Part shown: positions 6,519 to 62,650 of the stretch, piece by piece
Numbering within the stretch: position 1 is the first letter of the stretch
Layout: every line of letters begins with the position of its first letter
Translations under genes and position numbers: made by a program
From: Selaginella moellendorffii
Taxonomy: Eukaryota; Plantae; Lycopodiophyta
NCBI RefSeq assembly: GCF_000143415.4
Contig: NW_003314411.1
Location: 62,452-126,451 of the forward strand
DNA: 64,000 nt
Reading direction: 5' to 3'
Notes under the pieces: generated by a model
Seen by the model: the letters and a program-made list of their open reading frames with translations, nothing else
The model's database searches: none
What the model was told of the DNA's origin: nothing

Positions 6519-9146
6519 ATGGCCTCGGCAGGGGAGAGATCCAGTCCAGCACAGGCCATCGCGCCACGGCACAAGAATCACTCTGCGGTCCAGTTCGTCG
6601 CGGCAATCAAGCGCTGCGGCAAGTCGCAAGACCTGGAAGCTGGGCAATCGCTGCATCGGCAAGCGCTCTTGGCTGGATTCCACTCCAACAGGTTCGTGGC
6701 CGCGGCCCTGATCACAATGTATGGCAAATGCCAGTCCATGGCGCTCGCCAAGGAGATCTTCGATGGGATGATCCACGGCGAGCGGGATGTCGTGGCTTGG
6801 AATTCTTTGATCTTGGGGTTTGTGGAGAATGGCGAGAGCTCAGTGGCGATGGAGCTCTTTGGCGAGATGGATTGCGAGCCCAGTTCTCACGCGTATGTCG
6901 CGGCGATCAAGGCGTGTTCTTGCCTGGCGGCTCAGCATTTGCGTCTCTCCCTCGAGACAGGGATTGGTATCCACGATCGAGTGAAAGCGCGGGGATTGGA
7001 CTGTGATTTGGTGGTGGCGACGAGCTTGGTGGGTTTGTATGGGAAGTGTGGGAGAATGGATCTGGCGAGAGGAGTTTTTGGTGGGATGATCCAGAGGGAC
7101 GTGGTGGCCTGGAACTCTATGATCTTAGGATATGCCGAGAATGGAGAGGGCTCGAGGGCGTTGGAAGTTTTTGCCGCCATGGATTGTGAGCCGAGCGCTG
7201 TGACATTCATGGCTGCAATCAAGGCTTGCTTGAGCATTCTTTTTTCTTGCAGCGAGGAGGGATCAAAGAGAGGGATTTGTCTCGAGAGAGGGATTGCGAT
7301 TCACAAGATGGCCAGTGAGAAGTTTGGATCGGAGAATTTGGATGTGGCCTTGGCAACTTCGCTGATAGATTTTTACAGCAAGTGTGGAAGCTTGGAACGT
7401 GCGAGGGATGTGTTTCATGGGATGATTTGGAAGAATGTTGTGACTTGGAACTCCATGATCTTTGGATGTATAGAAAATGGAAAAAGTTTGCTGGCTATGG
7501 AGTTATTTGATAGCATGGATTGTGCACCAACTTTTGTCACGTATATTGCAGCTCTTAAGGCGTGCAGCTGTTTGGGCAGTGGTGAAACTCGCTCAAACAA
7601 GCAACTCTGGCTTAGAAGAGGGATTTTGATCCATCAAAGAGTGAGAGAGTGTGGAATGGATTCTTCTATGGCTGTGGCAAACACTTTGGTGGACATGTAT
7701 TGCAAGTGTGGGAGCTTGGAATTTGCTACCAAGATTTTTTACGGAATGACTCAAAGGGATGTTGTTACTTGGAATTGCCTGATTCTGGGATGTGTGGAGA
7801 ATGGGAGTTACTCCAAAGCTATGGATCTGTTCACCAAAATGGACTGTGAAAGAGATTCTTTCACTTATGTTGCTGCTTTCAAAGCCTGTGGAGGTTTAGC
7901 TTCAGAGGAATTCAATAGAGACTTTTATCTCAGAGAAGGGATTTCTCTACACAAGAAAGTGAGCGAACTTGGATTTGATTCTAACTTGGTTGTCCTCACC
8001 ACCTTGCTGGACATGTATAAAAGCTGTGGGAACATGCTACTTGCGAGGGAGGTCTTTGATGGTTTGAGGAAGAGAGATGTGGTAACTTGGACCACCATGA
8101 TCTTGGGATATGTAGAAAGTGGAGGAAATTTGGAAGCTCTGGAGCTCTTTTCCAGAATGGACTGTGAGCCAGATCCCTATGCTTTTGCTGCTGCTCTCAA
8201 GGCTTGTGAAGGCTTTTCTCGCAGAGAAGAATGCCTTGACAAAGTGGTGACTATTCACAAACAAGCTGAGCGCTGTGGACTAGAATCCAACACTGTTGTG
8301 GCAACTTCACTTGTGAGTGTGTATTCCAAGTGTGGAAAGATGGAAATTGCCAGGCTTGTTTTTGATGAAATGATCCAGAGGGATGTCCTGGCTTGGACCT
8401 CTCTTATACTTGGATATGCAAAGAATGGCCAGAGTCTGATAGCTCTAGAACTGTTTGCTACCATGAACTGTGAACCAGACCCTCTAACTTATGCTGCCTC
8501 ACTGGAAGCTTGTGGGAATCTAGCCATGGCTGGATTGGCAGCTGGGAAATATATCCATGCTAGAACTTGCAAGCTTGGACTAGAAGAAGATAATGTAATT
8601 GCTGCTAGCTTGATGAACTTCTATGCAAAGTGTGGCAGCATCTCTAAAGCTCAAGAACTGTTTGACAGTGTAAAGTCTCCAAATGTAGTGCTTTGGAACA
8701 CTTTGATAGCAGGATATAGCTCGGCTGGAGACCCTTTCCGGGTCCTTCATCTGGCAAGAGAAATGAAAGACGCTGGCATTGGAATGGATGGAATCACATT
8801 GGTTTCTATCCTCACAACTTGTAGCCATGCCGGTTTGCTCGAGCAAGGAGCTCTGTGCTTCGAATCAATGGTGAAGTGTGGGGTTAAAACGAGCGTGGAG
8901 CACTATAGTTGCTTGGTTGATATGTTTGGAAGAGCAAACCGGCTGGAAGAAGCGCTAACTCTAATCCAAACCATGCCAATGGAAGCGAGTGGTAGTATGT
9001 GGAGAAGTTTGCTAGGGGCATGTAGAAACTGGAAGAACGTAAAGGTTGGCGAGGTTGCATTTCAAGCGCTGGTCAGTGCCAGAGAAACTAAATCGGCCGA
9101 CTACGTTTTGATGAGTGATCTCTATGCAAGCTCGAGCATTAAGTAG
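6519..9146 (+). CDS. PLS-class pentatricopeptide repeat protein with E domain, no DYW
   Basis: Intronless 875-aa ORF with repeated MYxKCG...AxxxFDxM..RDVVxWN triplets and a C-terminal HYSCLVDMFGRA...WRSLLGAC...YVLMSDLY. Confidence 0.95.
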   Translation: MASAGERSSPAQAIAPRHKNHSAVQFVAAIKRCGKSQDLEAGQSLHRQALLAGFHSNRFVAAALITMYGKCQSMALAKEIFDGMIHGERDVVAWNSLILGFVENGESSVAMELFGEMDCEPSSHAYVAAIKACSCLAAQHLRLSLETGIGIHDRVKARGLDCDLVVATSLVGLYGKCGRMDLARGVFGGMIQRDVVAWNSMILGYAENGEGSRALEVFAAMDCEPSAVTFMAAIKACLSILFSCSEEGSKRGICLERGIAIHKMASEKFGSENLDVALATSLIDFYSKCGSLERARDVFHGMIWKNVVTWNSMIFGCIENGKSLLAMELFDSMDCAPTFVTYIAALKACSCLGSGETRSNKQLWLRRGILIHQRVRECGMDSSMAVANTLVDMYCKCGSLEFATKIFYGMTQRDVVTWNCLILGCVENGSYSKAMDLFTKMDCERDSFTYVAAFKACGGLASEEFNRDFYLREGISLHKKVSELGFDSNLVVLTTLLDMYKSCGNMLLAREVFDGLRKRDVVTWTTMILGYVESGGNLEALELFSRMDCEPDPYAFAAALKACEGFSRREECLDKVVTIHKQAERCGLESNTVVATSLVSVYSKCGKMEIARLVFDEMIQRDVLAWTSLILGYAKNGQSLIALELFATMNCEPDPLTYAASLEACGNLAMAGLAAGKYIHARTCKLGLEEDNVIAASLMNFYAKCGSISKAQELFDSVKSPNVVLWNTLIAGYSSAGDPFRVLHLAREMKDAGIGMDGITLVSILTTCSHAGLLEQGALCFESMVKCGVKTSVEHYSCLVDMFGRANRLEEALTLIQTMPMEASGSMWRSLLGACRNWKNVKVGEVAFQALVSARETKSADYVLMSDLYASSSIK

Positions 9147-14954: not shown

Positions 14955-15735
14955 TTACTTGAAGCCTTTGCTCCTCCTGAAGAGATAGTAGGCCGAGATA
15001 GCAGCCGACACGGCGAAGGCAATGACGGCAATGAAGGAGAGGAACACGGTGGCGGCGAAGTGGTCGCAAAATCTCTTGAAAGGCCCACACACCGCCTTCC
15101 ACTGGACTTTGTCCTCGCCTCTCTTGGCGATGTACGCAGCCTCTGCCGTGGCCGCGGCAGACCCCAGTAGCAAATATGTTAAAACCTGTTCACGAAGAAT
15201 CAGTGCCGCCTGGTCTTGGATAGAAGACAAAGAAGCAAGAAAACAGGCAACAGGAAAAACTGAAAAACTATACAGGAAAGAAGCGAGCAAAACGAAGCTC
15301 ACCTGGTCCAGAAGAAAGGTGAGCCAAGCGAGCACCGTGTTGTTAAGCACCCTCTTGTCTCTTATAAACGATAGCAACGATACGACTGCCTGGAGGAAAG
15401 CATAGCCACAGCAAATGGATGCTAAGACGAGCAGTGAGCTGCAAAGCGAAAAGGCCATAAGCTACAAAGAGAAAACAAAGAACTTACACTGGGGCTTTGG
15501 TGTTGTTGTATTTCGCTTGCAAAACTATCCCAGGAGCGATGACGGTAGTCTGGACGTTGTTCTTGAGCAGCACGATCACAGCAAGGCAGAAGGCAAAGGC
15601 CTTGATCCGGACCAGGAAATCCACCCCTTTGAGCAGCTTCCTGTGTCCAAAGCTCTCGTTGTTCGTCACCACTACACTCCCGGGACTAACTTGGCTCCCG
15701 ATTGGAACATGAGCATCGCCTCCCAGTACTCCCAT
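14955..15735 (-). CDS. CASP-like (DUF588/MARVEL) membrane protein, 3 exons
   Basis: DFLVRI, AKY, CGYAFLQ, AWLTFLLDQ|VLTYLLLGSAAATAE, W.AVC..F.RFC. Confidence 0.92.
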
Positions 15736-16064
15736 CCTTGAAGAACTAGACGAAAGCTGGCGTCGCGCACCAGGCCCTTTCTATGAACGCTTTGAAAATG
15801 TAGACTGCTACTGGTAACCACCAGAGGGAAGTAGCGACGGCCCCGCAGAAATATAGCTACTCAAACGGCCTTAAACGCCAGTAAAATCCGGATTTTCAAA
15901 CGGGAGAGTTGATCGCGCAACGTGAATTGGGCCGCTGTGCGCTGCCTGTTGATTTCGCTGCAATGAATACCCGGACAGGCGGCGAGCAGTAAATGCTGGC
16001 AAATGTGCTGCTGCGTAAAGTACCACCTCTACTTTATCACCACCTTCCGTTGTTCTAACCTGTG

Positions 16065-17838
16065 TCATTGAAATCCCTGAACAAAAAGGTAGCCAGTGAT
16101 TAGAAAAAGAAAGCCGTCTTTATCCAAATCCACCAACACTAGCTCACCTTGTTTAGGCTCATAAGCGCGTGTTGCTGCTGCTGCTGCTGCGGGTTAGCAT
16201 CCAAAGCGAGAGTTTGCTCGTTTTGTGGCAAACTTGACCGTCCTGAGATGGACTCTCGGTACAGACTGGTAATCACTGCACGCATCCGTTGGCTGTGACC
16301 CGAACAGTAAACTTTGGTCGCCAACGGTCTTGGAATGTCTGCTAGAGCCAAGGAGGAAGCAACATATATGAGCAGTTTGGAAAACAGACAGAGAAGGACG
16401 GACCTTGCTGTGACTTTCGCGAGTTATTGTCCTTAAAATCTTGAAGCAACGCATCAAAAGGTTTTCTCCGACCAGTAACAGCTCGTTTACTTGAAATTGA
16501 ATGTGATTTACCTATGCAGCAAAGCCAAGGCTTGTCATTCTTCAAGAGCGTCGAAGCACACACACTTACATGTCAATGGTTGCCTGCAAGGAGCTCCAGA
16601 TCGAGGTGACGGTACTCCACACATGATATCCAGGTCATCGACAGTGAACGGCAGATGCCTGAAAGTTAAGACCGAAACAGGATTAAATAAAACTAAGAAC
16701 GAACACAAATAGAAGTCTTACTGCTTTCGCCGTTTTCCGGATGAAGACAAACCTTCGGAATGTGAAACAGCACTTGGGCCCGCTACCAAGCAATCTTCTC
16801 CAGGATTACCGTCGCTCATCTCTACAAAGAACCTCGGCATTAAGTTTCAGCAGCTCAATTATGCAGCTTAGACCTCTTGGATTGTACACCGATAGTTTTC
16901 GTGGCCTCCCAACCTTTGGACCCGTCCCTCCCACTTCAGCTCCTGGATATAAAAAATCACAGATATGGTTTTCTCAGGATGCACAAAACCTCTTACGTTT
17001 TACTGCTTTTAATGTAGAAAAGCTTCCCATTTGCATATCGGACATGGATACCCCCGAGTCGAGCGGAGCTGCATCGTCCATGTCTTCGCCTAGCATTCCG
17101 TTTCCTAAACACCAGCAAGTATGACGTGAAAGAACGCAGCTAAAACTGTTACTTGATCTTGGAATAGTTCTCTTGCCACCATTCTCTACATCTACTCCGC
17201 TGTCCTCCGGCACCAACAATGATCTACAGCGCTCTGCAACAACAGGACACAAGGAGCTGAGAAAAAACCACATGAAATGGTAAACTAACCTGCATGAGCT
17301 GCATACTGGCTAACCTTAACAGGCTATTTGCACGCATTGCACGAAACCTGTATCGCTTCACACTCAGAAAGCCACGCAAGAAAAAACAAGAAAGTTTTTC
17401 TACATACAAGGCACAAGTGACCAAAGACGTGCACGTCTACAAGGAGAAGTATGCATCGGCAAACCAAAAGGATTAGATGGACCTGCTTCTTCCAAAAAAT
17501 TATCAGCCTCACTCATCTCTTTGTAGATAGTAAGCATTGCCACTCTCTCTCGAGCAATCTCTTGTGCTGGAAAAGGCAGAGAAAGCGTATGTTCCTAGCT
17601 AAGATAATTTCTACGCTAGAAAAAACCAAGGAATGAAGAAAACTAGGAGAGAATAGAGCAATGGTAAAGATAATTCGTACCTGGTGAAGGATCCAAATTA
17701 CTTCCACTCTGCAGAAGCCTTCCCATGGCTGCCAAATGCCCCCCAGCCGCAAACCCTCTCCCCAAGAGCCTGCAAGAACACCAAATTCCTCAACCTGGAT
17801 CGCGAAAACAACTAGATCACTCACATTTCCCCGTGCAT
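16065..17838 (-). CDS. SCA7-domain protein, candidate SGF73/ataxin-7 homologue; multi-exon, one in-frame TAG
   Basis: Exons spliced by eye give [10 protein letters not shown]...[18 protein letters not shown]...[18 protein letters not shown], then [23 protein letters not shown]|[21 protein letters not shown] (SCA7 signature), then [11 protein letters not shown]...[10 protein letters not shown] and PQQQQQQ. Both ends uncertain. Confidence 0.75.
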
Positions 17839-17986
17839 TTCCACTGCTCATTCACAGAGACGACGATCTTGGAGGAATCCGCAACCGCCCCTGCCCTAGA
17901 ACAAAGGACTGGATTCCAACGCAATACCAGCGAGCACCAAACGATAATCCGCGATCTGAGCAGCTTCCATCACCGATCGAGGATCC

Positions 17987-18005
17987 GAGAGAGAGAGAGA
18001 GAGAG
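17987..18005. repeat. (GA)n microsatellite
   Basis: Direct reading. Confidence 0.85.
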
Positions 18006-18059: not shown

Positions 18060-18131
18060 AGGTCCTACCGAGACTTGAACTCGGGCTACTGGATTCAGAG
18101 TCCAGTGTCCTAACCACTAGACCATAGGACC
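18060..18131 (-). tRNA. tRNA-Gln (anticodon CTG)
   Basis: Reverse complement GGTCCTATGGTCTAGTGGTTAGGACACTGGACTCTGAATCCAGTAGCCCGAGTTCAAGTCTCGGTAGGACCT folds as a cloverleaf with A and B boxes. A T-run terminator lies at 18037-18030. Confidence 0.97.
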
Positions 18132-18221
18132 AATTGCTGTGATGACGAGGCTACTACGGCAAACATAATGAAAATAAAAATACTCATCTTCCTCCATTTT
18201 TTTTCCTCTCTCCGAAGGGGA

Positions 18222-18923
18222 ATGGCCGACGCCAAGCAACACACGGGCTCCGGCGACGATGGTGGCGCTCCGGAGCTCTCCGCGCACACTCCAGCCACGC
18301 CACCGCTACCTTCCTCAGCATCCTCGCCACACAAGGTCAAATCTTCGCGACCCAGCTCGCCAAAATTTCTTTTTTCCTTTGCTCGATCGATTTTGCTCCC
18401 AAGCAATTGGATTCTTTAGTTTGTGTTGATCGATCGATCCATTCCCAGGAGCTACAGCAGCTTCAGTTGGAGCTCAGGCTGCTCGAAGCGCTCGAGATTT
18501 ATCATCCATCCAAGCTCCAAGGTAATAGCGATTAGATCGAGGAGAGAATTCCTCCACCAACTTGAGAGCGCTGTTTTCTCTGTGTGTCTGTCCAGGCATT
18601 CACCGGCACTTCATTCTCTATGGGCTCATGGAATTTCTAGAAAAGAGGTATGAAATCTTCAAACGCTCCACTCTCGATGCTATGATCCAATTTTTTTTCT
18701 CTACTTCTTACCAGATTAAACAGGCATTTTAGTGCCGCAGAGATCCTCCAAACCTTGAATGGATTCTACAACCTGGAATTACTGGTAAAAATCGCATTTT
18801 TTTTCACTTCTATGATCCCTCCCTTTGTTTTAGAAACCCGATGACGAAGAAGTGGAGCTAGCAAGCCACCAGGAAGATTTCTCGTTGCCCTCGTCCGTCA
18901 GAGAAGATCCAAAAGACGGTTGA
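18222..18923 (+). CDS. EAF7: NuA4 subunit EAF7/MRG-binding protein family, 5 exons
   Basis: Spliced LELRLLEALEIYHPSKLQGIHRHFILYGLMEFL...FSAAEILQTLNGFYNLELLKPDDEE...EDFSLP matches the plant EAF7 (CT20) pattern. Confidence 0.85.
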
Positions 18924-19175: not shown

Positions 19176-19547
19176 ATGACTGCCACTTACAAGCACTTGA
19201 TCATCCTCTTTGCTTTTGTGATTTTCACAGAGATGACTTTGGCGGCGATGAAAGGCTGTGGACAATCCTGCACAAAGGACGAAGAATGCAAGGGAAAGTT
19301 AGCCTGCGTTGGGCAAACGTGTGGAGATGACCCCGACATGGAAACGCAAATCTGCGGGCCTAGCCAGTTTCCGAAAGGCTGCTCCAAGCCTTGCAAGGTT
19401 CACGACGACTGCCCAGGCAAGCTCGCTTGCATGGACGGTGCTTGTGGCGACGATCCGGCTATGGAAACTCACATTTGCTCGAAGACTGGTGGTCGCCGTC
19501 CACATCCACCAAAGGCTGCGCCGGCTCCAGAATCCGCCTCCGACTGA
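19176..19547 (+). CDS. Secreted cysteine-rich protein made of two kissper (kiwellin N-terminal) modules
   Basis: Signal peptide, then two copies of C-x3-C-x5-C-x-GKLAC-x4-CGDDP-x-MET-x-IC, then a short Pro-rich tail. TATA box at about 19074. Confidence 0.8.
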   Translation: MTATYKHLIILFAFVIFTEMTLAAMKGCGQSCTKDEECKGKLACVGQTCGDDPDMETQICGPSQFPKGCSKPCKVHDDCPGKLACMDGACGDDPAMETHICSKTGGRRPHPPKAAPAPESASD

Positions 19548-26096: not shown

Positions 26097-29000
26097 ATGG
26101 AGCCGCGGCGCCAGGCAAGAACGCTCCTGGTCTTCTTCTTCGCGATATTCCGGGCGCTAGATCCATCGGCAGGCCAGGATTCGTGCTCTGTGACAGAGAT
26201 TGAAGCGCTGGAAGCTTTCCAACGAGGGGCGAGCTCGCTGGAGCTGTCGTCATGGTCTAGGAATTCGAGCTGCTGCCAGTGGCGAGGTGTCAGATGCGCG
26301 GCGTCGATCGATCAAGCCTACCGGGAGGCCGGCATCGATTACCGCGTCCAGGAAATCCGCCTCTCCGGATTGAAGCTCCGGGGCGGAAATATTATCGACA
26401 GCCTAGCGAGATTGCGCGGCCTCAGCCATCTCGATCTCTCCAGCAATGCTCTCTCCGGCTCCTTCCCAGGCAACGTTTCATCGCTTCCCAGGCTCGAGCG
26501 GCTCGACTTGAGCGCCAACAATCTCTCGGGACCGATCCTCCTTCCTCCAGGTTCGTTCCAGGCGGCTAGCTATCTCAACCTCTCCTCGAATCGCTTCGAC
26601 GGCTCCTGGAATTTCTCCGGAGGGATCAAGCTCCAGGTGCTCGATCTCAGCAACAACGCTCTCTCTGGCCAAATCTTCGAGAGCTTGTGCGAGGATGACG
26701 GTAGCTCCCAGCTACGCGTGCTGAGTTTCTCGGGCAACGACATCTCGGGTAGAATTCCTGCCAGTATCACCAAATGCCGCGGCCTGGAAACTTTCGAAGG
26801 GGAAGATAATCGCCTCCAAGGGAGAATTCCATCGTCCCTGTCGCAGCTGCCACTGCTACGATCCATCAGGCTCTCGTTTAACTCGCTCAGCGGCAGCATT
26901 CCAAGCGAGCTGAGCTCTCTCGCCAACCTCGAGGAGCTATGGCTCAACAAAAACTCTATCAAAGGTGGAGTGTTCTTGACGACGGGGTTTACGTCGCTGC
27001 GAGTTTTCTCGGCTCGGGAGAACAGGCTTTCAGGGCAGATCGCGGTGAATTGCTCCAGCACGAATTCATCGCTCGCGTATCTGGACCTCTCCTACAACTT
27101 ACTGAATGGAACCATCCCGGCAGCGATCGGCGAGTGCCACCGTCTCGAGACGCTTGCATTGACTGGGAACTTCCTCGAGGGCCGGATACCATCTCAGCTG
27201 GGATCTCTCAGGAACCTCACGACACTGATGCTCTCCAAGAACAATTTGGTCGGGAGGATTCCTCTCGAGTCTCTGCGTGAGTGTTCGAGCTTGGTGGCTC
27301 TGGTCCTCTCGAAGAACTATTTCTCAGGAACTCTCAACATGGCGCCATCGCCAGTGGGGAGCTTCAGGAACCTCCAGCTGCTCGCGGTCGGGAACTCGAA
27401 CCTCTCCGGCACCATTCCTCTGTGGCTGACGAACTCGACCAAGCTCCAAGTCCTGGACCTGTCGTGGAACATTTTCACTGGAAAGGTTCCACTCTGGATC
27501 GGGGACTTCTACCATCTCTTTTACGTGGACTTGTCCAACAATTCCTTCTCGGGTGCGCTCCCGGAAGAGCTTGCCAACTTGAAATCGCTCCGAGGCGACG
27601 AGATCGACACCTCGGGCATCAAGGCCGTCGAGAGCATCCTCTTCGTCAAGCACAAGAACAACATGACTCGGCTGCAGTACAATCAAGTGTCTGCGCTGCC
27701 TCCCTCCATCATCCTCGCCAGCAACCGGTTCCACGGACGGATTCCCGACGGCTACGGCGCTCTGAGAAGATTGGTGTCGTTGGACCTGGGCATCAACTTA
27801 CTCTCGGGAGTGATCCCGGCAAGCCTGGGGAACTTGAGCAACTTGGAGTCGATGGATCTCTCGCAGAACTCGCTGGGTGGAGCAATTCCCACGACGCTGA
27901 CGAGACTCTTTTCGCTGGCCAGGCTCAACCTCTCGTTCAACAAGCTCGAAGGCCCGATCCCGCTGGGCAACCAGTTCTCGACTTTCACGGCCTCGGCCTA
28001 CGCTGGAAACCCAAGACTCTGCGGATATCCACTGCCGGATAGCTGCGGTGATGGAAGCTCTCCACAGTCACAACAACGTAGCACCACCAAGAACGAGAGA
28101 AGCAAGAACTCCTCGAGCTTGGCAATCGGGATCGGCGTCAGCGTGGCACTTGGGATCACCGGCATCGCCATCGGGATTTGGATCTGGATGGTGTCGCCCA
28201 AGCAGGCCGTCCACCACCGAGACGACGAGGAGGAAGGCTCCGCCGCGGAGCTCCAGGACCTGTCCGAGATGATGAAGCGCACGGTGGAGGTGTTCCACAA
28301 CCGGGAGCTCCTCCGGACCCTGGTCAAGCAGCAGCGCCCGCTCACCAACGCGGATCTCGTCAAGGCGACGGACAACTTCGATCAATCCAACATCGTGGGC
28401 TGCGGCGGATTCGGGCTGGTGTTCGTGGCCAGCCTCCCCGACGGCACCAAGGTGGCGATCAAGCGCCTCACGGGCGACTGCCTCCAAGTGGAGCGCGAGT
28501 TCGAGGCAGAGGTCCAAGCTCTGGCTATGGCGGACCACCCCAACCTGGTAACGCTCCAAGGCTACTCCAGCTATGGCGAGCACCGGCTACTCATCTACTC
28601 CTACATGGAGAATGGTAGCCTGGACAGCTGGCTACACGAGAGCGCGAAGCGCCTGGATTGGTCCACGCGACTGGACATTGCCAGGGGGGCCGCGCGGGGA
28701 TTGGCGTACCTCCACCTGGGCTGCCAGCCACACATAGTCCACCGCGACATCAAGTCCAGCAACATCCTCCTGGACGGCCGATTCGTTGCCCACGTGGCGG
28801 ACTTTGGTTTGGCCAGGCTGATGCTGCCGACGGCCACCCACGTCAGCACGGAGATGGTCGGGACGCTGGGGTATATCCCGCCGGAATATGCGCAGAGCTG
28901 GATGGCGTCCCCGAAGGGCGACGTGTATAGCTTTGGCGTGGTGCTGCTCGAGCTACTGTCGCGGCGGAGGCCTGTGGATGTGTGTAGGGCGAATGGAGTG

Positions 29001-29207
29001 TATGATCTTGTGGCGTGGGTGAGGGAGATGAAAGGGGCGGGGCGTGGAGTGGAGGTTTTGGATCCGGCGCTAAGAGAGCGGGGGAACGAGGAGGAGATGG
29101 AGAGAATGCTAGAGGTGGCGTGCCAGTGTCTAAACCCTAATCCGGCGAGGCGGCCCGGGATCGAGGAGGTGGTGACGTGGCTCGAGGAGATTGGTCGCGG
29201 AGCGTAG
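26097..29207 (+). CDS. PSKR: Phytosulfokine receptor/PSY1R-type LRR receptor kinase (LRR-Xb)
   Basis: Intronless 1036-aa ORF with signal peptide, CCQWRGVRC cap, LRRs, island domain LFVK...LQYNQVSALPP, TM helix and RD kinase (ATDNFDQSNIVGCGGFGLV, HRDIKSSN, GTLGYIPPEY). Confidence 0.92.
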   Translation: MEPRRQARTLLVFFFAIFRALDPSAGQDSCSVTEIEALEAFQRGASSLELSSWSRNSSCCQWRGVRCAASIDQAYREAGIDYRVQEIRLSGLKLRGGNIIDSLARLRGLSHLDLSSNALSGSFPGNVSSLPRLERLDLSANNLSGPILLPPGSFQAASYLNLSSNRFDGSWNFSGGIKLQVLDLSNNALSGQIFESLCEDDGSSQLRVLSFSGNDISGRIPASITKCRGLETFEGEDNRLQGRIPSSLSQLPLLRSIRLSFNSLSGSIPSELSSLANLEELWLNKNSIKGGVFLTTGFTSLRVFSARENRLSGQIAVNCSSTNSSLAYLDLSYNLLNGTIPAAIGECHRLETLALTGNFLEGRIPSQLGSLRNLTTLMLSKNNLVGRIPLESLRECSSLVALVLSKNYFSGTLNMAPSPVGSFRNLQLLAVGNSNLSGTIPLWLTNSTKLQVLDLSWNIFTGKVPLWIGDFYHLFYVDLSNNSFSGALPEELANLKSLRGDEIDTSGIKAVESILFVKHKNNMTRLQYNQVSALPPSIILASNRFHGRIPDGYGALRRLVSLDLGINLLSGVIPASLGNLSNLESMDLSQNSLGGAIPTTLTRLFSLARLNLSFNKLEGPIPLGNQFSTFTASAYAGNPRLCGYPLPDSCGDGSSPQSQQRSTTKNERSKNSSSLAIGIGVSVALGITGIAIGIWIWMVSPKQAVHHRDDEEEGSAAELQDLSEMMKRTVEVFHNRELLRTLVKQQRPLTNADLVKATDNFDQSNIVGCGGFGLVFVASLPDGTKVAIKRLTGDCLQVEREFEAEVQALAMADHPNLVTLQGYSSYGEHRLLIYSYMENGSLDSWLHESAKRLDWSTRLDIARGAARGLAYLHLGCQPHIVHRDIKSSNILLDGRFVAHVADFGLARLMLPTATHVSTEMVGTLGYIPPEYAQSWMASPKGDVYSFGVVLLELLSRRRPVDVCRANGVYDLVAWVREMKGAGRGVEVLDPALRERGNEEEMERMLEVACQCLNPNPARRPGIEEVVTWLEEIGRGA

Positions 29208-39889: not shown

Positions 39890-42142
39890 CTACTTAATAA
39901 CACTATAGGCGAGTTTCTTGCTGTTTGAGAGAAGCACATATGGCGCAGAGGTCTCGGGCTCCAGTTTCACCACATGCTTGGCAGCATCGTTTGCTCCCTT
40001 TGCATCGCAATGCCCCAACACCGACGTCCAGTCTTGAGCCTCCGGAACATATGGCATGTTTTGTATAAGATCACGGGCATCCCCCAAATGCCCGGCACGC
40101 CCAAGCAAATCAATCAAGCAACTATACTGCTGCTTGGAGGCCTTCCGTCCTTGATCGATCTCCAAAAAGTTGAAGTACTTGCATCCTTCCTGGAGGCTCC
40201 CAACGTGACTCCGGCCTAGCAACAGGCAAGTGAAGGATACCTCATCGGGCTTCACTCCCTCGAGCTGCATTGCCTGGAACAGGTCCAAGGACGTTCCACG
40301 CTGTGCCTGCATTGTCAGCATGGTGTTCCACGTAATCACGTCACGGCGTGGCATCTCACGAAACGTTTTCCAGGCTAGCTGCGGATGCCCGTATTGGGCA
40401 TATGCCACCAGCATGGCGTTCCATGCCGATGTGTTAACTCTTGGCATGCTCAAGAACAACTGCAATGCTTCCTCTAGCTGGCCAGATTGGGCATAAGCTC
40501 CTAGCATTGCTGTCGTTGCGATTTCGTCTTTGTTTGGGGTGTCCTGATACAGACTTCTTGCTATTTCAAAATGACCTTTAGCGGCATAAGCTGCAAACAA
40601 AACTGTCCAGGAGATTGTGTCTCGGTTAGGCATAAGGTGAAACACAAAGTTTGTAGTTTCTAAATCAGAGATCTGGGCGTAAGAGTACAAAAGTACGTTC
40701 CAGGCGATTTGATCGTGCTCTGGCATTGAATCAAACACAGCTTTAGCTCGTAAGAGATCCCCGACGATAGCAAATCCCGTTAGCATTTCGGTACCAGATA
40801 CCACGTCTTTGGATGGCATTGAGCTGAACAGATGCATAACCTCGTCGAGGTTCCTTCCAGTGGAAGAATAGACAGCCAACATAGAATTCAGCGAGAAGAG
40901 ATTCACATCCTGCATTTTCTTGAAGAAAGCCTCGGCCATTTCCGGATCGCCACTCTTTGCCAAGCCGTTGAGCATCAGATTCCAGGAAACCATGTCCAAC
41001 ACGGGCATTTGCTCGAAGAATCCCACCGCTTGATCCAAATTCCCAGACTTTGCGAGCGCCGACAAGAGAGTGTTGTACGAAACAAGGTCTCTCTCCGCCA
41101 TGGCATCAAACAAGCTCCTCGCCTTGTGGATGTAGTTATTCCTGGCATATGCCGACAGCAGAGTATTCCAGGACACAAGGTCTCGCCTTGGAATCCCATC
41201 GAAGATCCTCTTGGCATCTTCCACGAACCCATTGTCCGTGCACGCGGCAAGGATGGCGTTCCACGATAGCGTGTCCCATTCGGGCATATTCCCGAACACG
41301 AGTCTTGCCTGGTCTAGATTCCCAGAGTTCCCGTACGCCGCGAGGATGCCGTCCCACGAGAGAAGGTCCACGTACGACATCGTGTCGTACAGGGTCTTTG
41401 CTTTGGCAGCATCGCCGTGCCGGCCGTACACCGACAGCATTGTGTTGCAGGTGACAAGATCTTTGTCGGGGATCTTGTCGAAGAGGACGGTCGCCTCGTG
41501 TACGTGCCCCCTCTGGGCATATGCTGTTAGCATCGAGTTCCATGATACGAGGCTCCAGTAGGGCATCGAATGGAACAAATCTCTAGCTTTTTCAAGATGT
41601 CCGTTTTGCGCATACGCAGCTAACAGGGCATTCCATGACACGAGATCCTTTTGGGGCATTTGATCAAACACAAGCTTTGTTGTGTGAATATCCCCAGATT
41701 GGGCATATGCCGTGAATAAGGCTGTCCACGAGATGATATCCCGTTGCGGCATTTTGTCAAATAAGACCTTTGCTTCTTGGGCCAAGCCGTCTCTGGAATA
41801 TGCCGAGAGCATTGCGTTCCATGAGACGTAGTCTTTAGTCGGCATCTGGTCGAAGATTCGCCTGGCCTGTGTGATATGCCCGCGTTGGGCATACGCTCCA
41901 AGCATGAGATTCCAGGAGAAGCTGTCCTTGGTGGGCATGGTGTTAAAGATGTGACTTGCGCTGTCGAGGCAGCCGAGCCTTCCAAACATCTGGACGAGCA
42001 TGTTTGAGACGAGGAGCCATTCCTTGGGGGAGAGCCTGCGCTGGTAAGCACGGGAGACAATGTGGGCGTGAGCATTGTGAGCATCTGGCAATGTCTTGGA
42101 GGACTTGATTCTATGTATACAATCCGAAAGCTCCAATGGCAT
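39890..42142 (-). CDS. PLS-class PPR protein dominated by a long array of 31-aa S/SS motifs, E domain
   Basis: About 18 consecutive DxxSWNxxLxAYAxxG...AxxxFxxMP units; C-terminal YSCLIDLLGRAG...EPETSAPYVLLSN. First ATG at 42142. Confidence 0.93.
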   Translation of the reverse strand: MPLELSDCIHRIKSSKTLPDAHNAHAHIVSRAYQRRLSPKEWLLVSNMLVQMFGRLGCLDSASHIFNTMPTKDSFSWNLMLGAYAQRGHITQARRIFDQMPTKDYVSWNAMLSAYSRDGLAQEAKVLFDKMPQRDIISWTALFTAYAQSGDIHTTKLVFDQMPQKDLVSWNALLAAYAQNGHLEKARDLFHSMPYWSLVSWNSMLTAYAQRGHVHEATVLFDKIPDKDLVTCNTMLSVYGRHGDAAKAKTLYDTMSYVDLLSWDGILAAYGNSGNLDQARLVFGNMPEWDTLSWNAILAACTDNGFVEDAKRIFDGIPRRDLVSWNTLLSAYARNNYIHKARSLFDAMAERDLVSYNTLLSALAKSGNLDQAVGFFEQMPVLDMVSWNLMLNGLAKSGDPEMAEAFFKKMQDVNLFSLNSMLAVYSSTGRNLDEVMHLFSSMPSKDVVSGTEMLTGFAIVGDLLRAKAVFDSMPEHDQIAWNVLLYSYAQISDLETTNFVFHLMPNRDTISWTVLFAAYAAKGHFEIARSLYQDTPNKDEIATTAMLGAYAQSGQLEEALQLFLSMPRVNTSAWNAMLVAYAQYGHPQLAWKTFREMPRRDVITWNTMLTMQAQRGTSLDLFQAMQLEGVKPDEVSFTCLLLGRSHVGSLQEGCKYFNFLEIDQGRKASKQQYSCLIDLLGRAGHLGDARDLIQNMPYVPEAQDWTSVLGHCDAKGANDAAKHVVKLEPETSAPYVLLSNSKKLAYSVIK

Positions 42143-42306
42143 TTGTATGCATTTGAAACTCCCGAGCCCTGACCACGTTTGAGCTCTCGAGCTGAAAAAG
42201 TCAATCCATGTCAACTCCGTCAATGGAATGTGTCAATGTAATGTGTCAAAATGAGAGTCAATAAAAGTCTTTAAAGACTGTGTTGGACTTTCGTCATCGC
42301 TCTCTC

Positions 42307-43923
42307 ATGAGCGAAATTAATCACTTTCTGACGCTTTCTTCTCCCCATTCGATTTCTTCCGCCAGACTAGACCAAGATCACCATCCGTTGTGTGACCGCG
42401 ATTGCGATCCTCCTCCACAAGACAAGTTCTCGCGTGAGGATCTCCAGGAACTTCTAAGTAGAAAGGATCCAGCCATCTACACTCACCTCCTCCAACAATG
42501 TGGCAGCGCGAAGGCTCTCAGCGCAGGGAGATTGATCCACTCCCACATCGCCAGCAGCGGCAAGCTCGCCCTCACGCGCCTCGCAAACCACGTCATGATC
42601 ATGTATAGACAGTGCGGGGAACTGGAAGAAACTCTCACCATCTTCAACGATCTGAAAACAAAGAACGTTTACTCATGGAACATCATGCTGGGCGCCTTCG
42701 CCGACAAGCTCCAGATCCATCACGCAAAGAAAATCTTCGACCAAATGCCCGAGCGGAGCATCGTGTCGTGGAACTCTATGCTCGCGGCATATGCCCAGGC
42801 GGGGCATCTGTCCGCGGCGCGCGGTATCTTCCGTGCCATGCCGCGGCACGACGTGGTGACGTGGAATGCGCTGGCCTCGGGCTACCGCGACGCCGGCGAG
42901 CCGCGCGGCGCTGTCGAGGTCTACTTGACCATGCTGCTCGACGGGGCGTGCCGCCCGGACCGCGTGAGCTTCATTGGCGCGCTGGACGCGTGCGGGAGAG
43001 CGGGGAATATCCTCTGCGGCGAGAGCATCCACGCCAACGCCGTGGAGGCGGGCTTCGCATTGGCGGTCAGCGTGTGTACCGCGGCGGTGGACATGTACGG
43101 CAAATGCCGCCGCGCGGACCGTGCCACAGCGGTGTTTGACGCGGCTCCGTACAAGAGCCCCATCTTGTGGACGGCCATGCTGGCGGCACACGCCGCCGCC
43201 GGTGACGTGGATGCCGCGCGGTATCTCTTCGACGGCATGCCGTACGAGAGGAGCGTGGTGCCATGGACCGCCATGATGGCCGGCTACTCGCAAAACGGCC
43301 ATGGCCTCGACGCACTGCGGCTCTTCCGTACGATGGACCTGGAGGGCGTGGCGCCCAACCGGGTAACATTCATCACTGTGCTAGATGCTTGTTCGTTGGT
43401 CCCGGCATTTACCCCGGGTAGAATCGTCCATGGTGAAATCCTCAACCGGGGCATCCCACTTGACGTGGTGCTGGGGACGTCGCTAGTGGGGATGTATGCC
43501 CAGTGTGGGCATCTGGAGTACGCGAGGGATCTCTTCGATTCGCTTCCCGTCAGGAGCTTGATCTCGTGGAACTGTATGATCTCGGGCTATGCGCGGGGCG
43601 GCCACGCCGATCAATGCCTCGATCTCCTCCAATCGATGCAAATCGAGAGCGCTGCGTCGCCCTGCCGATCGACCATCATCAGCATTCTGTTCGCTTGCAG
43701 CCACGGCGGGGCGCTGGATCGAGGGCTGGAGCTGTGGCGATCGATGGAGATGGACCTGGCGATCGATCGAGAGTTTGATCACTACGTGAGCCTGCTAGAT
43801 CTGCTCTGCCGGTCGGGGAAGATGGAGTTTGCCCGAGACGTGTTGGAAGGGATGCCCTACGAGCCCGACTCCATCGCATGGACCACATTCCTCGGCTCTT
43901 CTAGCATCAACAGTGGCGATTGA
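42307..43923 (+). CDS. PLS-class PPR protein ending within the E domain
   Basis: Intronless ORF with P/L/S motifs; ends HYVSLLDLLCRSG...PYEPDSIAWTTFLG. First ATG at 42307. Confidence 0.9.
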   Translation: MSEINHFLTLSSPHSISSARLDQDHHPLCDRDCDPPPQDKFSREDLQELLSRKDPAIYTHLLQQCGSAKALSAGRLIHSHIASSGKLALTRLANHVMIMYRQCGELEETLTIFNDLKTKNVYSWNIMLGAFADKLQIHHAKKIFDQMPERSIVSWNSMLAAYAQAGHLSAARGIFRAMPRHDVVTWNALASGYRDAGEPRGAVEVYLTMLLDGACRPDRVSFIGALDACGRAGNILCGESIHANAVEAGFALAVSVCTAAVDMYGKCRRADRATAVFDAAPYKSPILWTAMLAAHAAAGDVDAARYLFDGMPYERSVVPWTAMMAGYSQNGHGLDALRLFRTMDLEGVAPNRVTFITVLDACSLVPAFTPGRIVHGEILNRGIPLDVVLGTSLVGMYAQCGHLEYARDLFDSLPVRSLISWNCMISGYARGGHADQCLDLLQSMQIESAASPCRSTIISILFACSHGGALDRGLELWRSMEMDLAIDREFDHYVSLLDLLCRSGKMEFARDVLEGMPYEPDSIAWTTFLGSSSINSGD

Positions 43924-60450: not shown

Positions 60451-62650
60451 AGAAAGAAGACTATCAGCTCTGTGACAAGGCTGCTACGCTAGTGTACCTT
60501 GAGCGGGAAAGTCTTCTCCCGAGCTTTCAAAATGGTATCGGCAAAGCGACCTTTCAGCAGAGCTGCACGAACGCTCTTTTCGGGAGAGACTGGCCTCTCA
60601 GATTGGAGTTCTCTGCTGCTGCAAAGCTCATGAGAAGCCAGAAAATCGTCACGCTTCACGCTTACATTTTTCGGCTTGAGATTCAGGTAAGTCCCCAGCC
60701 TCCCCAGGTCTGACTGTTACGGGCTCTGGAACATATCACACAAAAAAGATTAGTATCCCGCTGAGAAAAATGAATCCTCCATGGACAAGCAGCAGCAGGC
60801 AGTGCATGAACGGAGACCCACAAATGAAAAGAATGCAAAGTGTGCACAAGACGGCACCCACGTTTTGCACCGTCAATCTTGTCAGACGGGCTGGATAATT
60901 GCTCGCGAACAGCACCAAAACCCATAGGCTCCTGGCAAGAATACCGCACGGAAGGGCAGTTCAGCCACCTCCAAAAAAAAATCCCCCCCACTTCCACGAG
61001 AAAAGAAAAGAATCGCTCTCACTCACTCCTCTCTTTTTTTCTGCCTAACTAGTCACCGTTCCCGTTCCCCAAGCAAATACCTTCTGAGAGGTAGGCTTCT
61101 CTATACCAGCAGTTCGAGGACCTTCGGCGTCGGAATCGCTGTGAGAAGAGCTCCCGGAATCCGATTCTGAAAAAAAAAACCGGTTGTCAAGCATGCCTGG
61201 GCACACAAAAAACATACCACTGGAATCTGAACCAGAGCTGCTGGAAGAACTTCCTCCAGACGACTCTCTTCCATCATTAGGTGTATCTTTGTCAACTACA
61301 ACAGGTGAATAATTGGCTGTAGGCATGTCGTCCTCTCCATCGATATCAACGTCCTCATCTAGCCCTTCACCACCTAGACGATCATTAACATATATCAGAC
61401 ACTTACGACGACGAGAACTCAAGAACATACTCTTTCGACTCTTCTTCGGTGAATCTCCCGGAGCCGTTCCCCCAGTCTGCTGGGAAAGACAAAGACAAAG
61501 AACACAGGTCAAAGTAAGAACTACCAACGACAAGAAATACCTTGATGCCTTCTGCTGGCTGCGGCCGGGGCCTCTTCTTGTTTTTCGGCTTCATACAGCT
61601 CGCAACCATCTTGTGAAGCTCCCATAGTGTGTCGTTGTCGATCCCATCAATGTCGACTTCGATCGTATCTTCGCTCTGGCTAAGGTTTGGGTTGTGCTTC
61701 TTGAGTAGCAAAACGATCTCGTCGGCTTTGTCACCTGGGTTCTGCTCCAACACCTTCTCCAGATTCTTACCCAGCTCCGTCTTCTCCTCGTAAGTCATCT
61801 GTCTCTTGCCCGACTTCTTGCTTCCCCTGGGAGCCCCGGCGGGTTTCTTGAGCGACGACAATTGATCCTCGATGCTGAGGAGGCTCTGCTTGAGGTTCTG
61901 CAAGGCCGGGTTTGGGTTCCCCTGAGCAATCTCCGCAAACACCTCGTCCTCCACCCGGCACTTGGTCTGCTCCTCCTCCAGCTTCTCCTTGATGCACCTC
62001 CACCTCTCATCGAAAATCTGGCGAAGTATGTCCGCCATGATGAACACGTCGTGCCCGGGCGGGTTGTAAGTCATGGCATTCGAAAAGGTGAGCTTGACAT
62101 CGTCCGCAAACTCGACTGGCGTGCGGTAGTGGCCGCCCTCGAGCTTCTTCTTGATGGTGCCCAGGTCCATGGGCCGCCGGATCACCTTGTGGTAGTCGTG
62201 GAGCCCGAGTTTGACAGCGTCCACGGGCTCGTTGAAAACCCAAGCGTGCTTGTGGGTGATGAGCTTCTTGAGCAGCGTCCCACACTGTTTCATTATGTCG
62301 CCCATCCTCTTCATCCGCGCTAGCTCCACCCTTTGCCGCTTGTTGTCAATGTCGCCCTTAGTCCCTTTCTTGGGCGGGACGAGCGCCTTGGGCTTGACCT
62401 TCTCCGGCGGCGGCATCTTGTCCTTGGCCGAGAAATACTCCGAGGTGCTGTACATCTGATTCGCCTTGGGCGTCCGCTTCTCCTTGCTGCTGCCGCCCGT
62501 GCCCGGCGTGCCGAGAGTGCCCGACGATCTGGACTGCTGCTCTAGCGCCTCAATCTTGGTGCTAATCCCGATAACCTGTTCCAGGTCGAGCTTCAAGCGC
62601 TTGCGGACCTCGCGCTTGGATTCTTTCGGCATTGCCGACACAGATTCCAT
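59814..62650 (-). CDS. GTE: GTE/BET bromodomain and extra-terminal protein, multi-exon
   Basis: WVFNEPVD...[14 protein letters not shown]...F.NAMTYNP bromodomain; ET domain (MTYEEK...IEVDID...LWEL); C-terminal [17 protein letters not shown] region and [15 protein letters not shown]...[11 protein letters not shown]. Confidence 0.93.
60422..60450. repeat. (AC)n microsatellite in a GTE intron
   Basis: Direct reading. Confidence 0.9.

What the first reader, a model, noticed from the sequence alone, without database searches (positions are those of the whole stretch)
16065..17838. Candidate plant SGF73/ataxin-7: SCA7 domain joined to a plant-family N-terminal zinc-finger block
Seen: the ORF track hides this gene because it is split into small exons. 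Spliced by eye it gives [40 protein letters not shown], plus an N-terminal AAMGRLL...DVHVFG...[17 protein letters not shown]2-H zinc finger and a C-terminal PLATKVY...R.R..I..LY block. Established: CGV..P.xxxC.R.LTCK.HS...RRAV.GR..PFD.LL is the SCA7 signature of yeast Sgf73 and human ATXN7, which anchor the deubiquitination module to SAGA, and Arabidopsis is generally described as lacking a recognisable SGF73. Inference from memory, unverified: the N- and C-terminal blocks match an angiosperm family that lacks SCA7. If so, this gene links that family to SGF73 and implies later loss of the SCA7 domain.
Basis: partly seen in the sequence, partly recalled or inferred. Interest (0 to 1): 0.85.

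Follow-up and report, generated by a model that had tools for sequence, protein, structure and literature searches.

The report
Selaginella SGF73/ataxin-7 gene, zinc finger disabled
This is the already annotated Selaginella moellendorffii member of a land-plant family related to yeast Sgf73 and human ataxin-7; its SCA7 domain is intact, but its N-terminal zinc finger is cut by a stop codon and is skipped in the only open-frame mRNA, whereas flowering plants keep the finger and have lost SCA7.

Summary
The gene is real. It lies on the minus strand with CDS 17838..16065, and RNA contigs confirm its introns. It is S. moellendorffii SELMODRAFT_431321, named 'SCA7 domain-containing protein' in Swiss-Prot and RefSeq. 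A 2021 review already counts an SGF73 in lycophytes.

SCA7 is confirmed (Pfam 69.9 bits). Its best matches among solved structures are yeast Sgf73 and human ATXN7.

The TAG is also in independent DNA and RNA contigs. The reference allele further lacks 18 nt of the finger spacer. The only open-frame transcript joins exon 1 to exon 5 and skips the three finger exons. It gives a 286-aa protein identical to RefSeq XP_024522666.

Orthologues with finger + SCA7 + PLATKVY block occur in liverworts, Sphagnum, gymnosperms and Amborella. More than 300 protein clusters in magnoliids, monocots and eudicots keep the finger and PLATKVY block, but SCA7 has eroded.

So the gene is known. What I did not find described is the complementary domain loss and the many angiosperm orthologues, which reviews report as absent. 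No Brassicales member was seen; that search was not exhaustive.

The parts
17825..17838 (-). RefSeq start codon (ATG 17838-17836) and first 14 coding bases. They are followed by a 55-nt GT-AG intron (17824-17770).
   Evidence: The spliced product equals P0129 / XP_024522666.1 exactly. The joint 17769/17825 is present in X4 and X19 contigs.
17681..17769 (-). Exon 1. It encodes the conserved N-terminal block (GRG..AAMGRLL..), which aligns with GRGxMAAMERLL of the orthologues.
   Evidence: Alignment. Its donor at 17681 is used in all observed joints.
17483..17566 (-). Ancestral exon 2, the acidic helix before the finger. It was not seen correctly spliced; contigs run through both flanking introns.
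   Evidence: X19 record 10, X5 records 20 and 21. The same exon boundaries are implied by Diphasiastrum isoform P0136, which skips the equivalent segment.
17408..17436 (-). Ancestral exon 3 (DVHVFGH..). Compared with DNA run X1, the window allele lacks 18 nt after 17413. That shortens the spacer before the finger from 11 residues, as in the orthologues, to 5.
   Evidence: table 4; alignment.
17290..17347 (-). Ancestral exon 4, the Sgf73/ATXN7-type C-x2-C-x11-H-x3-C finger. It carries an in-frame TAG at 17326-17324 in place of the second Lys of CKKP, which is invariant in the five-orthologue alignment.
   Evidence: No difference is listed at this place in X1, X5 or X19, all of which cover it.
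17153..17233 (-). Exon 5. It starts with the end of the finger (E-R-C) and continues into a degenerate basic stretch. In the open-frame mRNA it is joined directly to exon 1, skipping 447 nt.
   Evidence: The joint 17233->17681 is in X4 and X19.
16722..17104 (-). Exons 6-8 (17104-16997, 16942-16874, 16821-16722). They encode an acidic, low-complexity linker.
   Evidence: All joints were observed.
16404..16658 (-). Exons 9 and 10 (16658-16570, 16511-16404). Together they encode the SCA7 zinc-binding domain.
   Evidence: Pfam PF08313 halves hit adjoining profile positions. The whole protein scores 69.9 bits. Best matches among solved structures are Sgf73 and ATXN7.
16148..16338 (-). Exon 11. It encodes the plant-family PLATKVY..R.R...LY block, a predicted helix, followed by a short poly-Gln run. 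The acceptor is a NAGNAG site (16341 or 16338).
   Evidence: Joint; alignment A3; AF2 helix 233-251 with pLDDT 73-86.
16065..16076 (-). Last coding exon (GFQ, then stop TGA at 16067-16065).
   Evidence: The joint 16076/16148 is present in three runs.

Best explanation
The locus is the S. moellendorffii orthologue (SELMODRAFT_431321) of a land-plant ATXN7/SGF73-like family.

Ancestral layout, in order:
- an N-terminal MAAMERLL block
- an acidic helix
- an Sgf73/ATXN7-type zinc finger
- a basic KKPPRKARKK stretch
- the SCA7 domain
- a PLATKVY helix block
- a C-terminal tail

In this species the finger part has decayed. A TAG replaces a conserved lysine, the reference allele has an 18-nt deletion, and the two introns around the helix exon are not seen removed. 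The only open-frame mRNA joins exon 1 to exon 5. It yields a 286-aa protein with SCA7 and the PLATKVY block but no finger. Transcripts that include the finger exon all end in premature stops.

Inferred, not shown:
- In yeast and human the finger part of Sgf73/ATXN7 sits inside the deubiquitinase module, and the more C-terminal part ties it to SAGA (established knowledge; PMC6128693, PMC8194025).
- The Selaginella protein can then at most keep the SCA7/chromatin or SAGA-side role, and no longer holds UBP22-SGF11-ENY2.
- Mesangiosperms took the opposite path: finger kept, SCA7 eroded.
For: - Gene model and exact identity of the exon-skipping product to RefSeq P0129.
- Spliced joints in RNA contigs of three studies, including 17233->17681 in two of them.
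- The TAG is present in the window and not listed as different in DNA run X1 or RNA runs X5 and X19, which cover it.
- The 18-nt indel.
- SCA7 is significant.
- The ATXN7/Sgf73 type of both domains in the orthologues.
- Orthologue alignment showing the TAG at the conserved Lys and the spacer deletion.
- All RefSeq isoforms at both haplotype loci lack the finger. One starts at a Met downstream of it.
- SCA7 erosion series in seed plants and absence in Diphasiastrum.
Against: - Contigs show presence, not absence. A rare fully spliced exon 1-2-3-4-5 mRNA could exist.
- One RNA run (X5) showed only the finger-exon form.
- All four zinc ligands and most conserved residues of the finger are still intact, so the decay is recent, or read-through of the TAG is conceivable.
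- No protein-level data are available.
- The role of the finger-less protein is inferred from yeast and human only.
- The PLATKVY block has no detectable match to Sgf73/ATXN7.
Confidence: 0.75

Rival explanations
1. The whole locus is a decaying pseudogene. Its transcripts make no useful protein.
For: - The finger is broken.
- The basic KKPPRKARKK block is degenerate.
- The roughly 150-aa C-terminal tail found in the orthologues is missing.
- There are upstream ORFs in the leader.
- Several mis-spliced forms were seen.
Against: - SCA7 scores as high as in any plant orthologue (69.9 bits Pfam; 93 bits with the plant model).
- The PLATKVY block is intact.
- The 286-aa frame is open at both haplotype loci.
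- The gene is transcribed and spliced in runs from several studies.
Confidence: 0.15
2. A full-length finger + SCA7 protein is still made, either by read-through of the TAG or from an allele without it.
For: The zinc ligands and most conserved residues are retained. Finger-exon transcripts exist.
Against: - The TAG is present in all data sets laid.
- The transcripts seen with the finger exon also retain introns 1-2 or are frameshifted, so they stop before or at the finger regardless of the TAG.
- The context AAA-TAG-CCT is not the known plant read-through context (my own knowledge).
Confidence: 0.05
3. The family is an ATXN7L3/SGF11-type protein (Sgf11 finger + SCA7), not SGF73/ATXN7.
For: Pfam Sgf11 (PF08209) hits the finger of the orthologues near its cut-off, 22-29 bits. 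Many UniRef entries are auto-named 'SAGA-associated factor 11'.
Against: - The finger-block profile hits ATXN7 at E=7.6e-6, against Sgf11 at 0.36-0.87.
- Ginkgo is colinear with yeast Sgf73 across finger and SCA7.
- The SCA7 half matches Sgf73 and ATXN7, with no ATXN7L3 match.
- A review reports a separate SGF11 in plants, lycophytes included (PMC7915528).
Confidence: 0.05

Closest known systems
Yeast Sgf73 / human ATXN7 (SAGA deubiquitinase-module anchor)
   Same: The SCA7 domain matches best to these. The orthologues have the same order, finger then SCA7, and the finger block aligns with ATXN7 117-174.
   Different: - The plant proteins are much shorter.
- They have plant-only blocks ([16 protein letters not shown]-terminal NGxVPV), with no detectable match after SCA7.
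- In this Selaginella gene the finger is disabled.
Swiss-Prot P0DH68 / RefSeq XP_024522666 'SCA7 domain-containing protein SELMODRAFT_431321'
   Same: It is this very gene. The 286-aa product is identical.
   Different: The records show only the finger-less models. They do not mention the decayed finger exons or the SGF73 relationship.
Angiosperm proteins auto-named 'SAGA-associated factor 11', 'SCA7 domain-containing protein' or, once, 'SAGA-ASSOCIATED FACTOR 73' (Salix)
   Same: They are orthologous over about 96% of their length. They share the N-terminal block, the finger, the basic stretch, the PLATKVY block and the C-terminal tail.
   Different: They keep the finger but have lost the SCA7 zinc ligands. 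This is the reverse of Selaginella.
Sgf11 / ATXN7L3
   Same: A related small C2HC finger, with weak Pfam Sgf11 hits.
   Different: The match is weaker than to ATXN7. A review lists a separate plant SGF11 (PMC7915528).

Membership tests
SGF73/ATXN7 | SCA7 zinc-binding domain (Pfam PF08313) | tested here: met
   The two exon halves score 18.4 + 37.1 bits at adjoining profile positions. The spliced protein scores 69.9 bits against a cut-off of 23.
SGF73/ATXN7 | N-terminal Sgf73/ATXN7-type zinc finger in the encoded protein, upstream of SCA7 | tested here: not met
   The finger exon carries an in-frame TAG, and the only open-frame mRNA skips it. The feature is met in the orthologues.
SGF73/ATXN7 | Domains closer to Sgf73/ATXN7 than to Sgf11/ATXN7L3 | tested here: met
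   ATXN7 at 7.6e-6 against Sgf11 at 0.36 or worse.
SGF73/ATXN7 | Segment after SCA7 that anchors the protein in the SAGA core | tested here: inconclusive
   Neither the PLATKVY exon nor its profile matched any Sgf73/ATXN7 chain. AF2 gives only a helix of moderate confidence.
SGF73/ATXN7 | Physical association with UBP22/Ubp8-SGF11-ENY2 and with SAGA | not testable with these tools
   Needs co-purification or complex modelling.
ATXN7L3/SGF11 | Sgf11-type finger as the best match | tested here: not met
   Pfam Sgf11 scores sit only near the cut-off. PDB Sgf11 chains match at E=0.36-0.87, below ATXN7.
Land-plant SELMODRAFT_431321-like family | MAAMERLL block, SCA7 and/or finger, PLATKVY block, colinear | tested here: met
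   E=2e-22 to Ginkgo and liverwort members; alignment. The C-terminal tail and the basic block are missing or degenerate in Selaginella.

The most novel reading that the evidence does not exclude
Land plants never lost SGF73 as a gene. Lineages instead shed one of its two zinc modules. SCA7 was lost in mesangiosperms, in Diphasiastrum and apparently in some gymnosperm transcripts. The DUB-binding finger was lost in Selaginella. Most flowering plants would then carry an overlooked SGF73 orthologue with an intact finger that could still bind or activate the UBP22 module. Brassicales, and so Arabidopsis, may be a true loss. That would explain why the field concluded that plants lack SGF73.
Probability: 0.45. 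Interest if true: 0.7.

Novelty: new variant of a known kind. Interest (0 to 1): 0.5.

Why it matters
Plant SAGA reviews state that plants, or at least monocots and eudicots, lack Sgf73/ATXN7, and that the H2B deubiquitinase module therefore acts apart from SAGA (PMC8194025, PMC6128693, PMC7915528).

The data here show that the gene family persists across land plants, with lineage-specific loss of either the finger or SCA7. This gives concrete proteins with which to test how, or whether, the module is tethered outside Arabidopsis.

It also offers a natural separation-of-function pair: Selaginella has SCA7 only, and eudicots have the finger only.

For the window itself the result is more modest. 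It is a known gene whose finger exons are dead.

Tried and rejected
- PLATKVY exon against PDB sequences, against its own profile search and against the ESM Atlas: nothing useful.
- The 45-aa block against 1.84 billion representatives: only the gene's own protein and a spurious repeat protein. The query was too short, and the family was found only once a full-length protein id was available.
- My recollection that the C-terminal block equals 'block III' of ATXN7: no support.
- My guess that Arabidopsis AT1G32730 is a member: wrong. Papers place it in SWI/SNF or SRS lists.
- A possible link to the Arabidopsis plant-specific SAGA subunits SCS1/2A/2B: not testable, because no sequences or gene codes are in the held papers.
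- AF2 model of the 286-aa protein: mean pLDDT 53.5, too poor for fold searches, so none were run.
- Polymorphisms between haplotypes are too few for a selection test.
- Full-length spliced sequences were never typed into search tools. The exons were searched by reference, and then the database's own protein ids were used.

Full report
**What is there**

The organism is Selaginella moellendorffii. The best database match is 'SCA7 domain-containing protein SELMODRAFT_431321'. Swiss-Prot entries P0DH68 and P0DH66 and RefSeq isoforms exist at two haplotype loci. An older gene model fused this gene to the CASP-like gene just downstream (P0004).

**Check of the observation**

The two SCA7 exons hit Pfam SCA7 at adjoining profile positions, 16-36 with 18.4 bits and 38-67 with 37.1 bits. 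The spliced protein scores 69.9 bits, E=1.7e-19. Among solved structures, the C-terminal SCA7 half matches yeast Sgf73 (1.3e-5) and human ATXN7 (3.9e-5) best.

The finger as encoded in this window is therefore interrupted.

**RNA evidence**

One DNA run and three RNA-like runs from different studies were laid on 15900-18000. The RNA-like runs contain spliced contigs, so they are RNA-derived.

- Nine of my eleven coding introns were confirmed at the exact base.
- The acceptor of exon 11 lies 3 nt further on, at a NAGNAG site that gives the isoforms with and without one Ala.
- A 55-nt intron (17824-17770) lies just after an upstream start codon at 17838.
- Introns 1 (17680-17567) and 2 (17482-17437) were never seen removed. 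Contigs run straight through them.
- Two alternative joints use the exon 1 donor. The joint 17681->17233 skips exons 2-4. It is in frame and was seen in X4 and X19. The joint 17681->17347 skips exons 2-3 and shifts the frame. It was seen in X19.
- Run X5 showed only the form that includes the finger exon and retains the introns.

Translation of each form shows that only the exon 2-4-skipping form is open. From the ATG at 17838 it gives 286 aa, identical to RefSeq XP_024522666.1 (P0129). Every form containing the finger exon stops early, before or at the TAG.

No difference at the TAG is listed for X1 (DNA), X5 or X19, and all three cover it. X1 carries 18 extra nt after 17413 that the window and the X5/X19 allele lack. 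The tool warns that contigs show presence rather than absence, so a rare full-length mRNA is not excluded.

**Relatives**

The finger-less protein was used as the query, followed by a profile of the first hits. These searches found full-length orthologues in:

- liverworts (Riccia, Calypogeia, Marchantia)
- Sphagnum
- gymnosperms (Ginkgo, Cryptomeria, Taxus)
- Amborella and Victoria

The orthologues share an N-terminal MAAMERLL block, an acidic helix, the finger C-N-x-C-K-K-P-x-K-x-S-Q-Y-A-A-H-A-E-R-C, a basic KKPPRKARKK stretch, SCA7, a PLATKVY..R.R..G.LY block and a C-terminal tail ending in NGxVPV.

Aligned with them, the Selaginella TAG sits on the second Lys of CKKP, which is invariant in the five-sequence alignment A1. 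The 18 nt present in X1 restore the 11-residue spacer that all orthologues have. The four zinc ligands are still present, so the damage looks recent. Selaginella has also lost the C-terminal tail, and its basic stretch is degenerate.

**Which known family**

- The Ginkgo orthologue matches human ATXN7 in two colinear stretches, the finger block 64-122 against 117-175 and then SCA7 (E=7e-11). It matches yeast Sgf73 colinearly across both domains (E=3e-10). Sgf11 reaches only 0.84.
- A 29-sequence profile of the finger block gives ATXN7 at 7.6e-6, a fungal SAGA SCA7 protein at 0.016, Sgf73 at 0.12 and Sgf11 at 0.36-0.87.
- Pfam's Sgf11 model hits the finger near its cut-off. This explains the frequent automatic name 'SAGA-associated factor 11'.
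- I conclude that the family is of the SGF73/ATXN7 type.
- The PLATKVY block has no detectable counterpart in Sgf73 or ATXN7 chains. AF2 predicts it as a helix with pLDDT 73-86, in an otherwise poor model with mean pLDDT 53.5.

**The angiosperm family**

More than 300 clusters from magnoliids, monocots and eudicots match at E of about 1e-60 to 1e-140, over about 96% of the query. They carry the finger and the PLATKVY block but have no Pfam SCA7.

| Species | Pfam SCA7 score |
|---|---|
| Amborella | 47.5 bits |
| Victoria | 30 bits |
| Magnolia | 13.7 bits (below cut-off) |
| Persea, Elaeis, Nelumbo, Vitis, Prunus, Theobroma | none |
| Diphasiastrum (lycophyte) | none |

A plant-specific SCA7 model shows the same graded erosion. 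Remnants are still detectable in magnoliids, Proteales and Ranunculales, and SCA7 is eroded in some gymnosperm-like transcripts. The alignment shows residual similarity with the ligands mutated, rather than a clean deletion, in eudicots.

No Brassicales protein was among the best 120 hits of a Theobroma query, although Malvales, Sapindales, fabids and even asterids were. That hints at loss in the Arabidopsis lineage, but the search was not exhaustive.

**Literature**

- Reviews state that Arabidopsis, or plants in general, lack Sgf73/ATXN7 (PMC8194025; PMC4532415).
- Nassrallah et al. searched green plants without success (PMC6128693).
- Moraga and Aquea found a homologue only in Physcomitrella (PMC4604261).
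- Vlachonasios et al. 2021 score SGF73 as present in liverworts, mosses, lycophytes, gymnosperms and the ANA grade, and as not detected in ferns, monocots and eudicots (PMC7915528).
- I found no paper in the held library that names this locus.
- Database names already hint at the link: 'SELMODRAFT_431321-like' for Magnolia and Cryptomeria, and 'SAGA-ASSOCIATED FACTOR 73' for one Salix protein.

**Mechanism**

Shown: the gene is transcribed and spliced, the finger exons are disabled, and the open frame encodes SCA7 plus the PLATKVY helix.

Inferred from yeast and human knowledge: the finger part of Sgf73/ATXN7 is the piece that sits in the deubiquitinase module, and the rest ties that module to SAGA. 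A finger-less Selaginella protein would then no longer hold UBP22-SGF11-ENY2, and could keep only a chromatin- or SAGA-side role. The angiosperm proteins may do the reverse.

**Verdict**

The gene is known. The disabled finger in Selaginella, and the breadth of finger-only orthologues in flowering plants, appear not to be described.

Noticed in passing
window 18060-18131 (-): A tRNA-Gln (anticodon CTG) gene lies directly upstream of the gene's 5' leader. A (GA)n run sits at about 17986-18003 between them.
   Followed up: no
window 14955-15735 (-): A CASP-like membrane protein gene (CASPL 2U1, Swiss-Prot P0DH67) lies just downstream on the same strand. Old gene models fused it to the SCA7 gene (P0004, P0131). 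RNA contigs of 1.8-2.7 kb that cover the last SCA7-gene exons run on below 15900, so read-through or overlapping transcripts are possible.
   Followed up: partly
window 17968-17970 and 17849-17851 (-): There are two upstream ATGs in the 5' leader. The second, once spliced, opens a 32-codon ORF that overlaps the RefSeq start at 17838 out of frame. It could damp translation.
   Followed up: partly
window 16338-16341 (-): A NAGNAG acceptor at exon 11 gives isoforms with and without one Ala (RefSeq 287 and 286 aa). The RNA contigs used the distal site.
   Followed up: yes
window 16768: In the other haplotype, a 3-nt insertion (AGT on the + strand) adds one Thr to the linker. It is seen in RNA contigs and in P0001.
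   Followed up: partly
P0023 (Cryptomeria isoform X9); P0013-P0015 and P0018 (Logan transcripts about 75% identical to Ginkgo): One Cryptomeria isoform drops the second half of SCA7. A set of gymnosperm-like transcripts has SCA7 with mutated ligands (LTC to LTY, KRAV to KCTV). Erosion or optional use of SCA7 may therefore predate the angiosperms.
   Followed up: partly
P0043, P0135-P0140 (Diphasiastrum complanatum): The other lycophyte sampled keeps the finger and the PLATKVY block but has no SCA7 in any of its seven isoforms. This is the opposite of Selaginella.
   Followed up: partly
window 18220-18900 (+): A small multi-exon gene is transcribed divergently from the SCA7 gene. From memory, one exon resembles the EAF7/MRGBP motif, but Pfam gave no hit on that 26-aa exon alone.
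   Followed up: partly
window 6519-9146 (+), 39890-42223 (-), 42280-43923 (+), 26097-29207 (+), 61403-62650 (-): The window also holds three intron-less PPR genes, an LRR receptor kinase and a BET bromodomain gene. This is ordinary for Selaginella.
   Followed up: no
window 19176-19547 (+): An ORF for a small secreted cysteine-rich protein with two repeats of a C-x-C-rich module. It has only weak Pfam hints.
   Followed up: no
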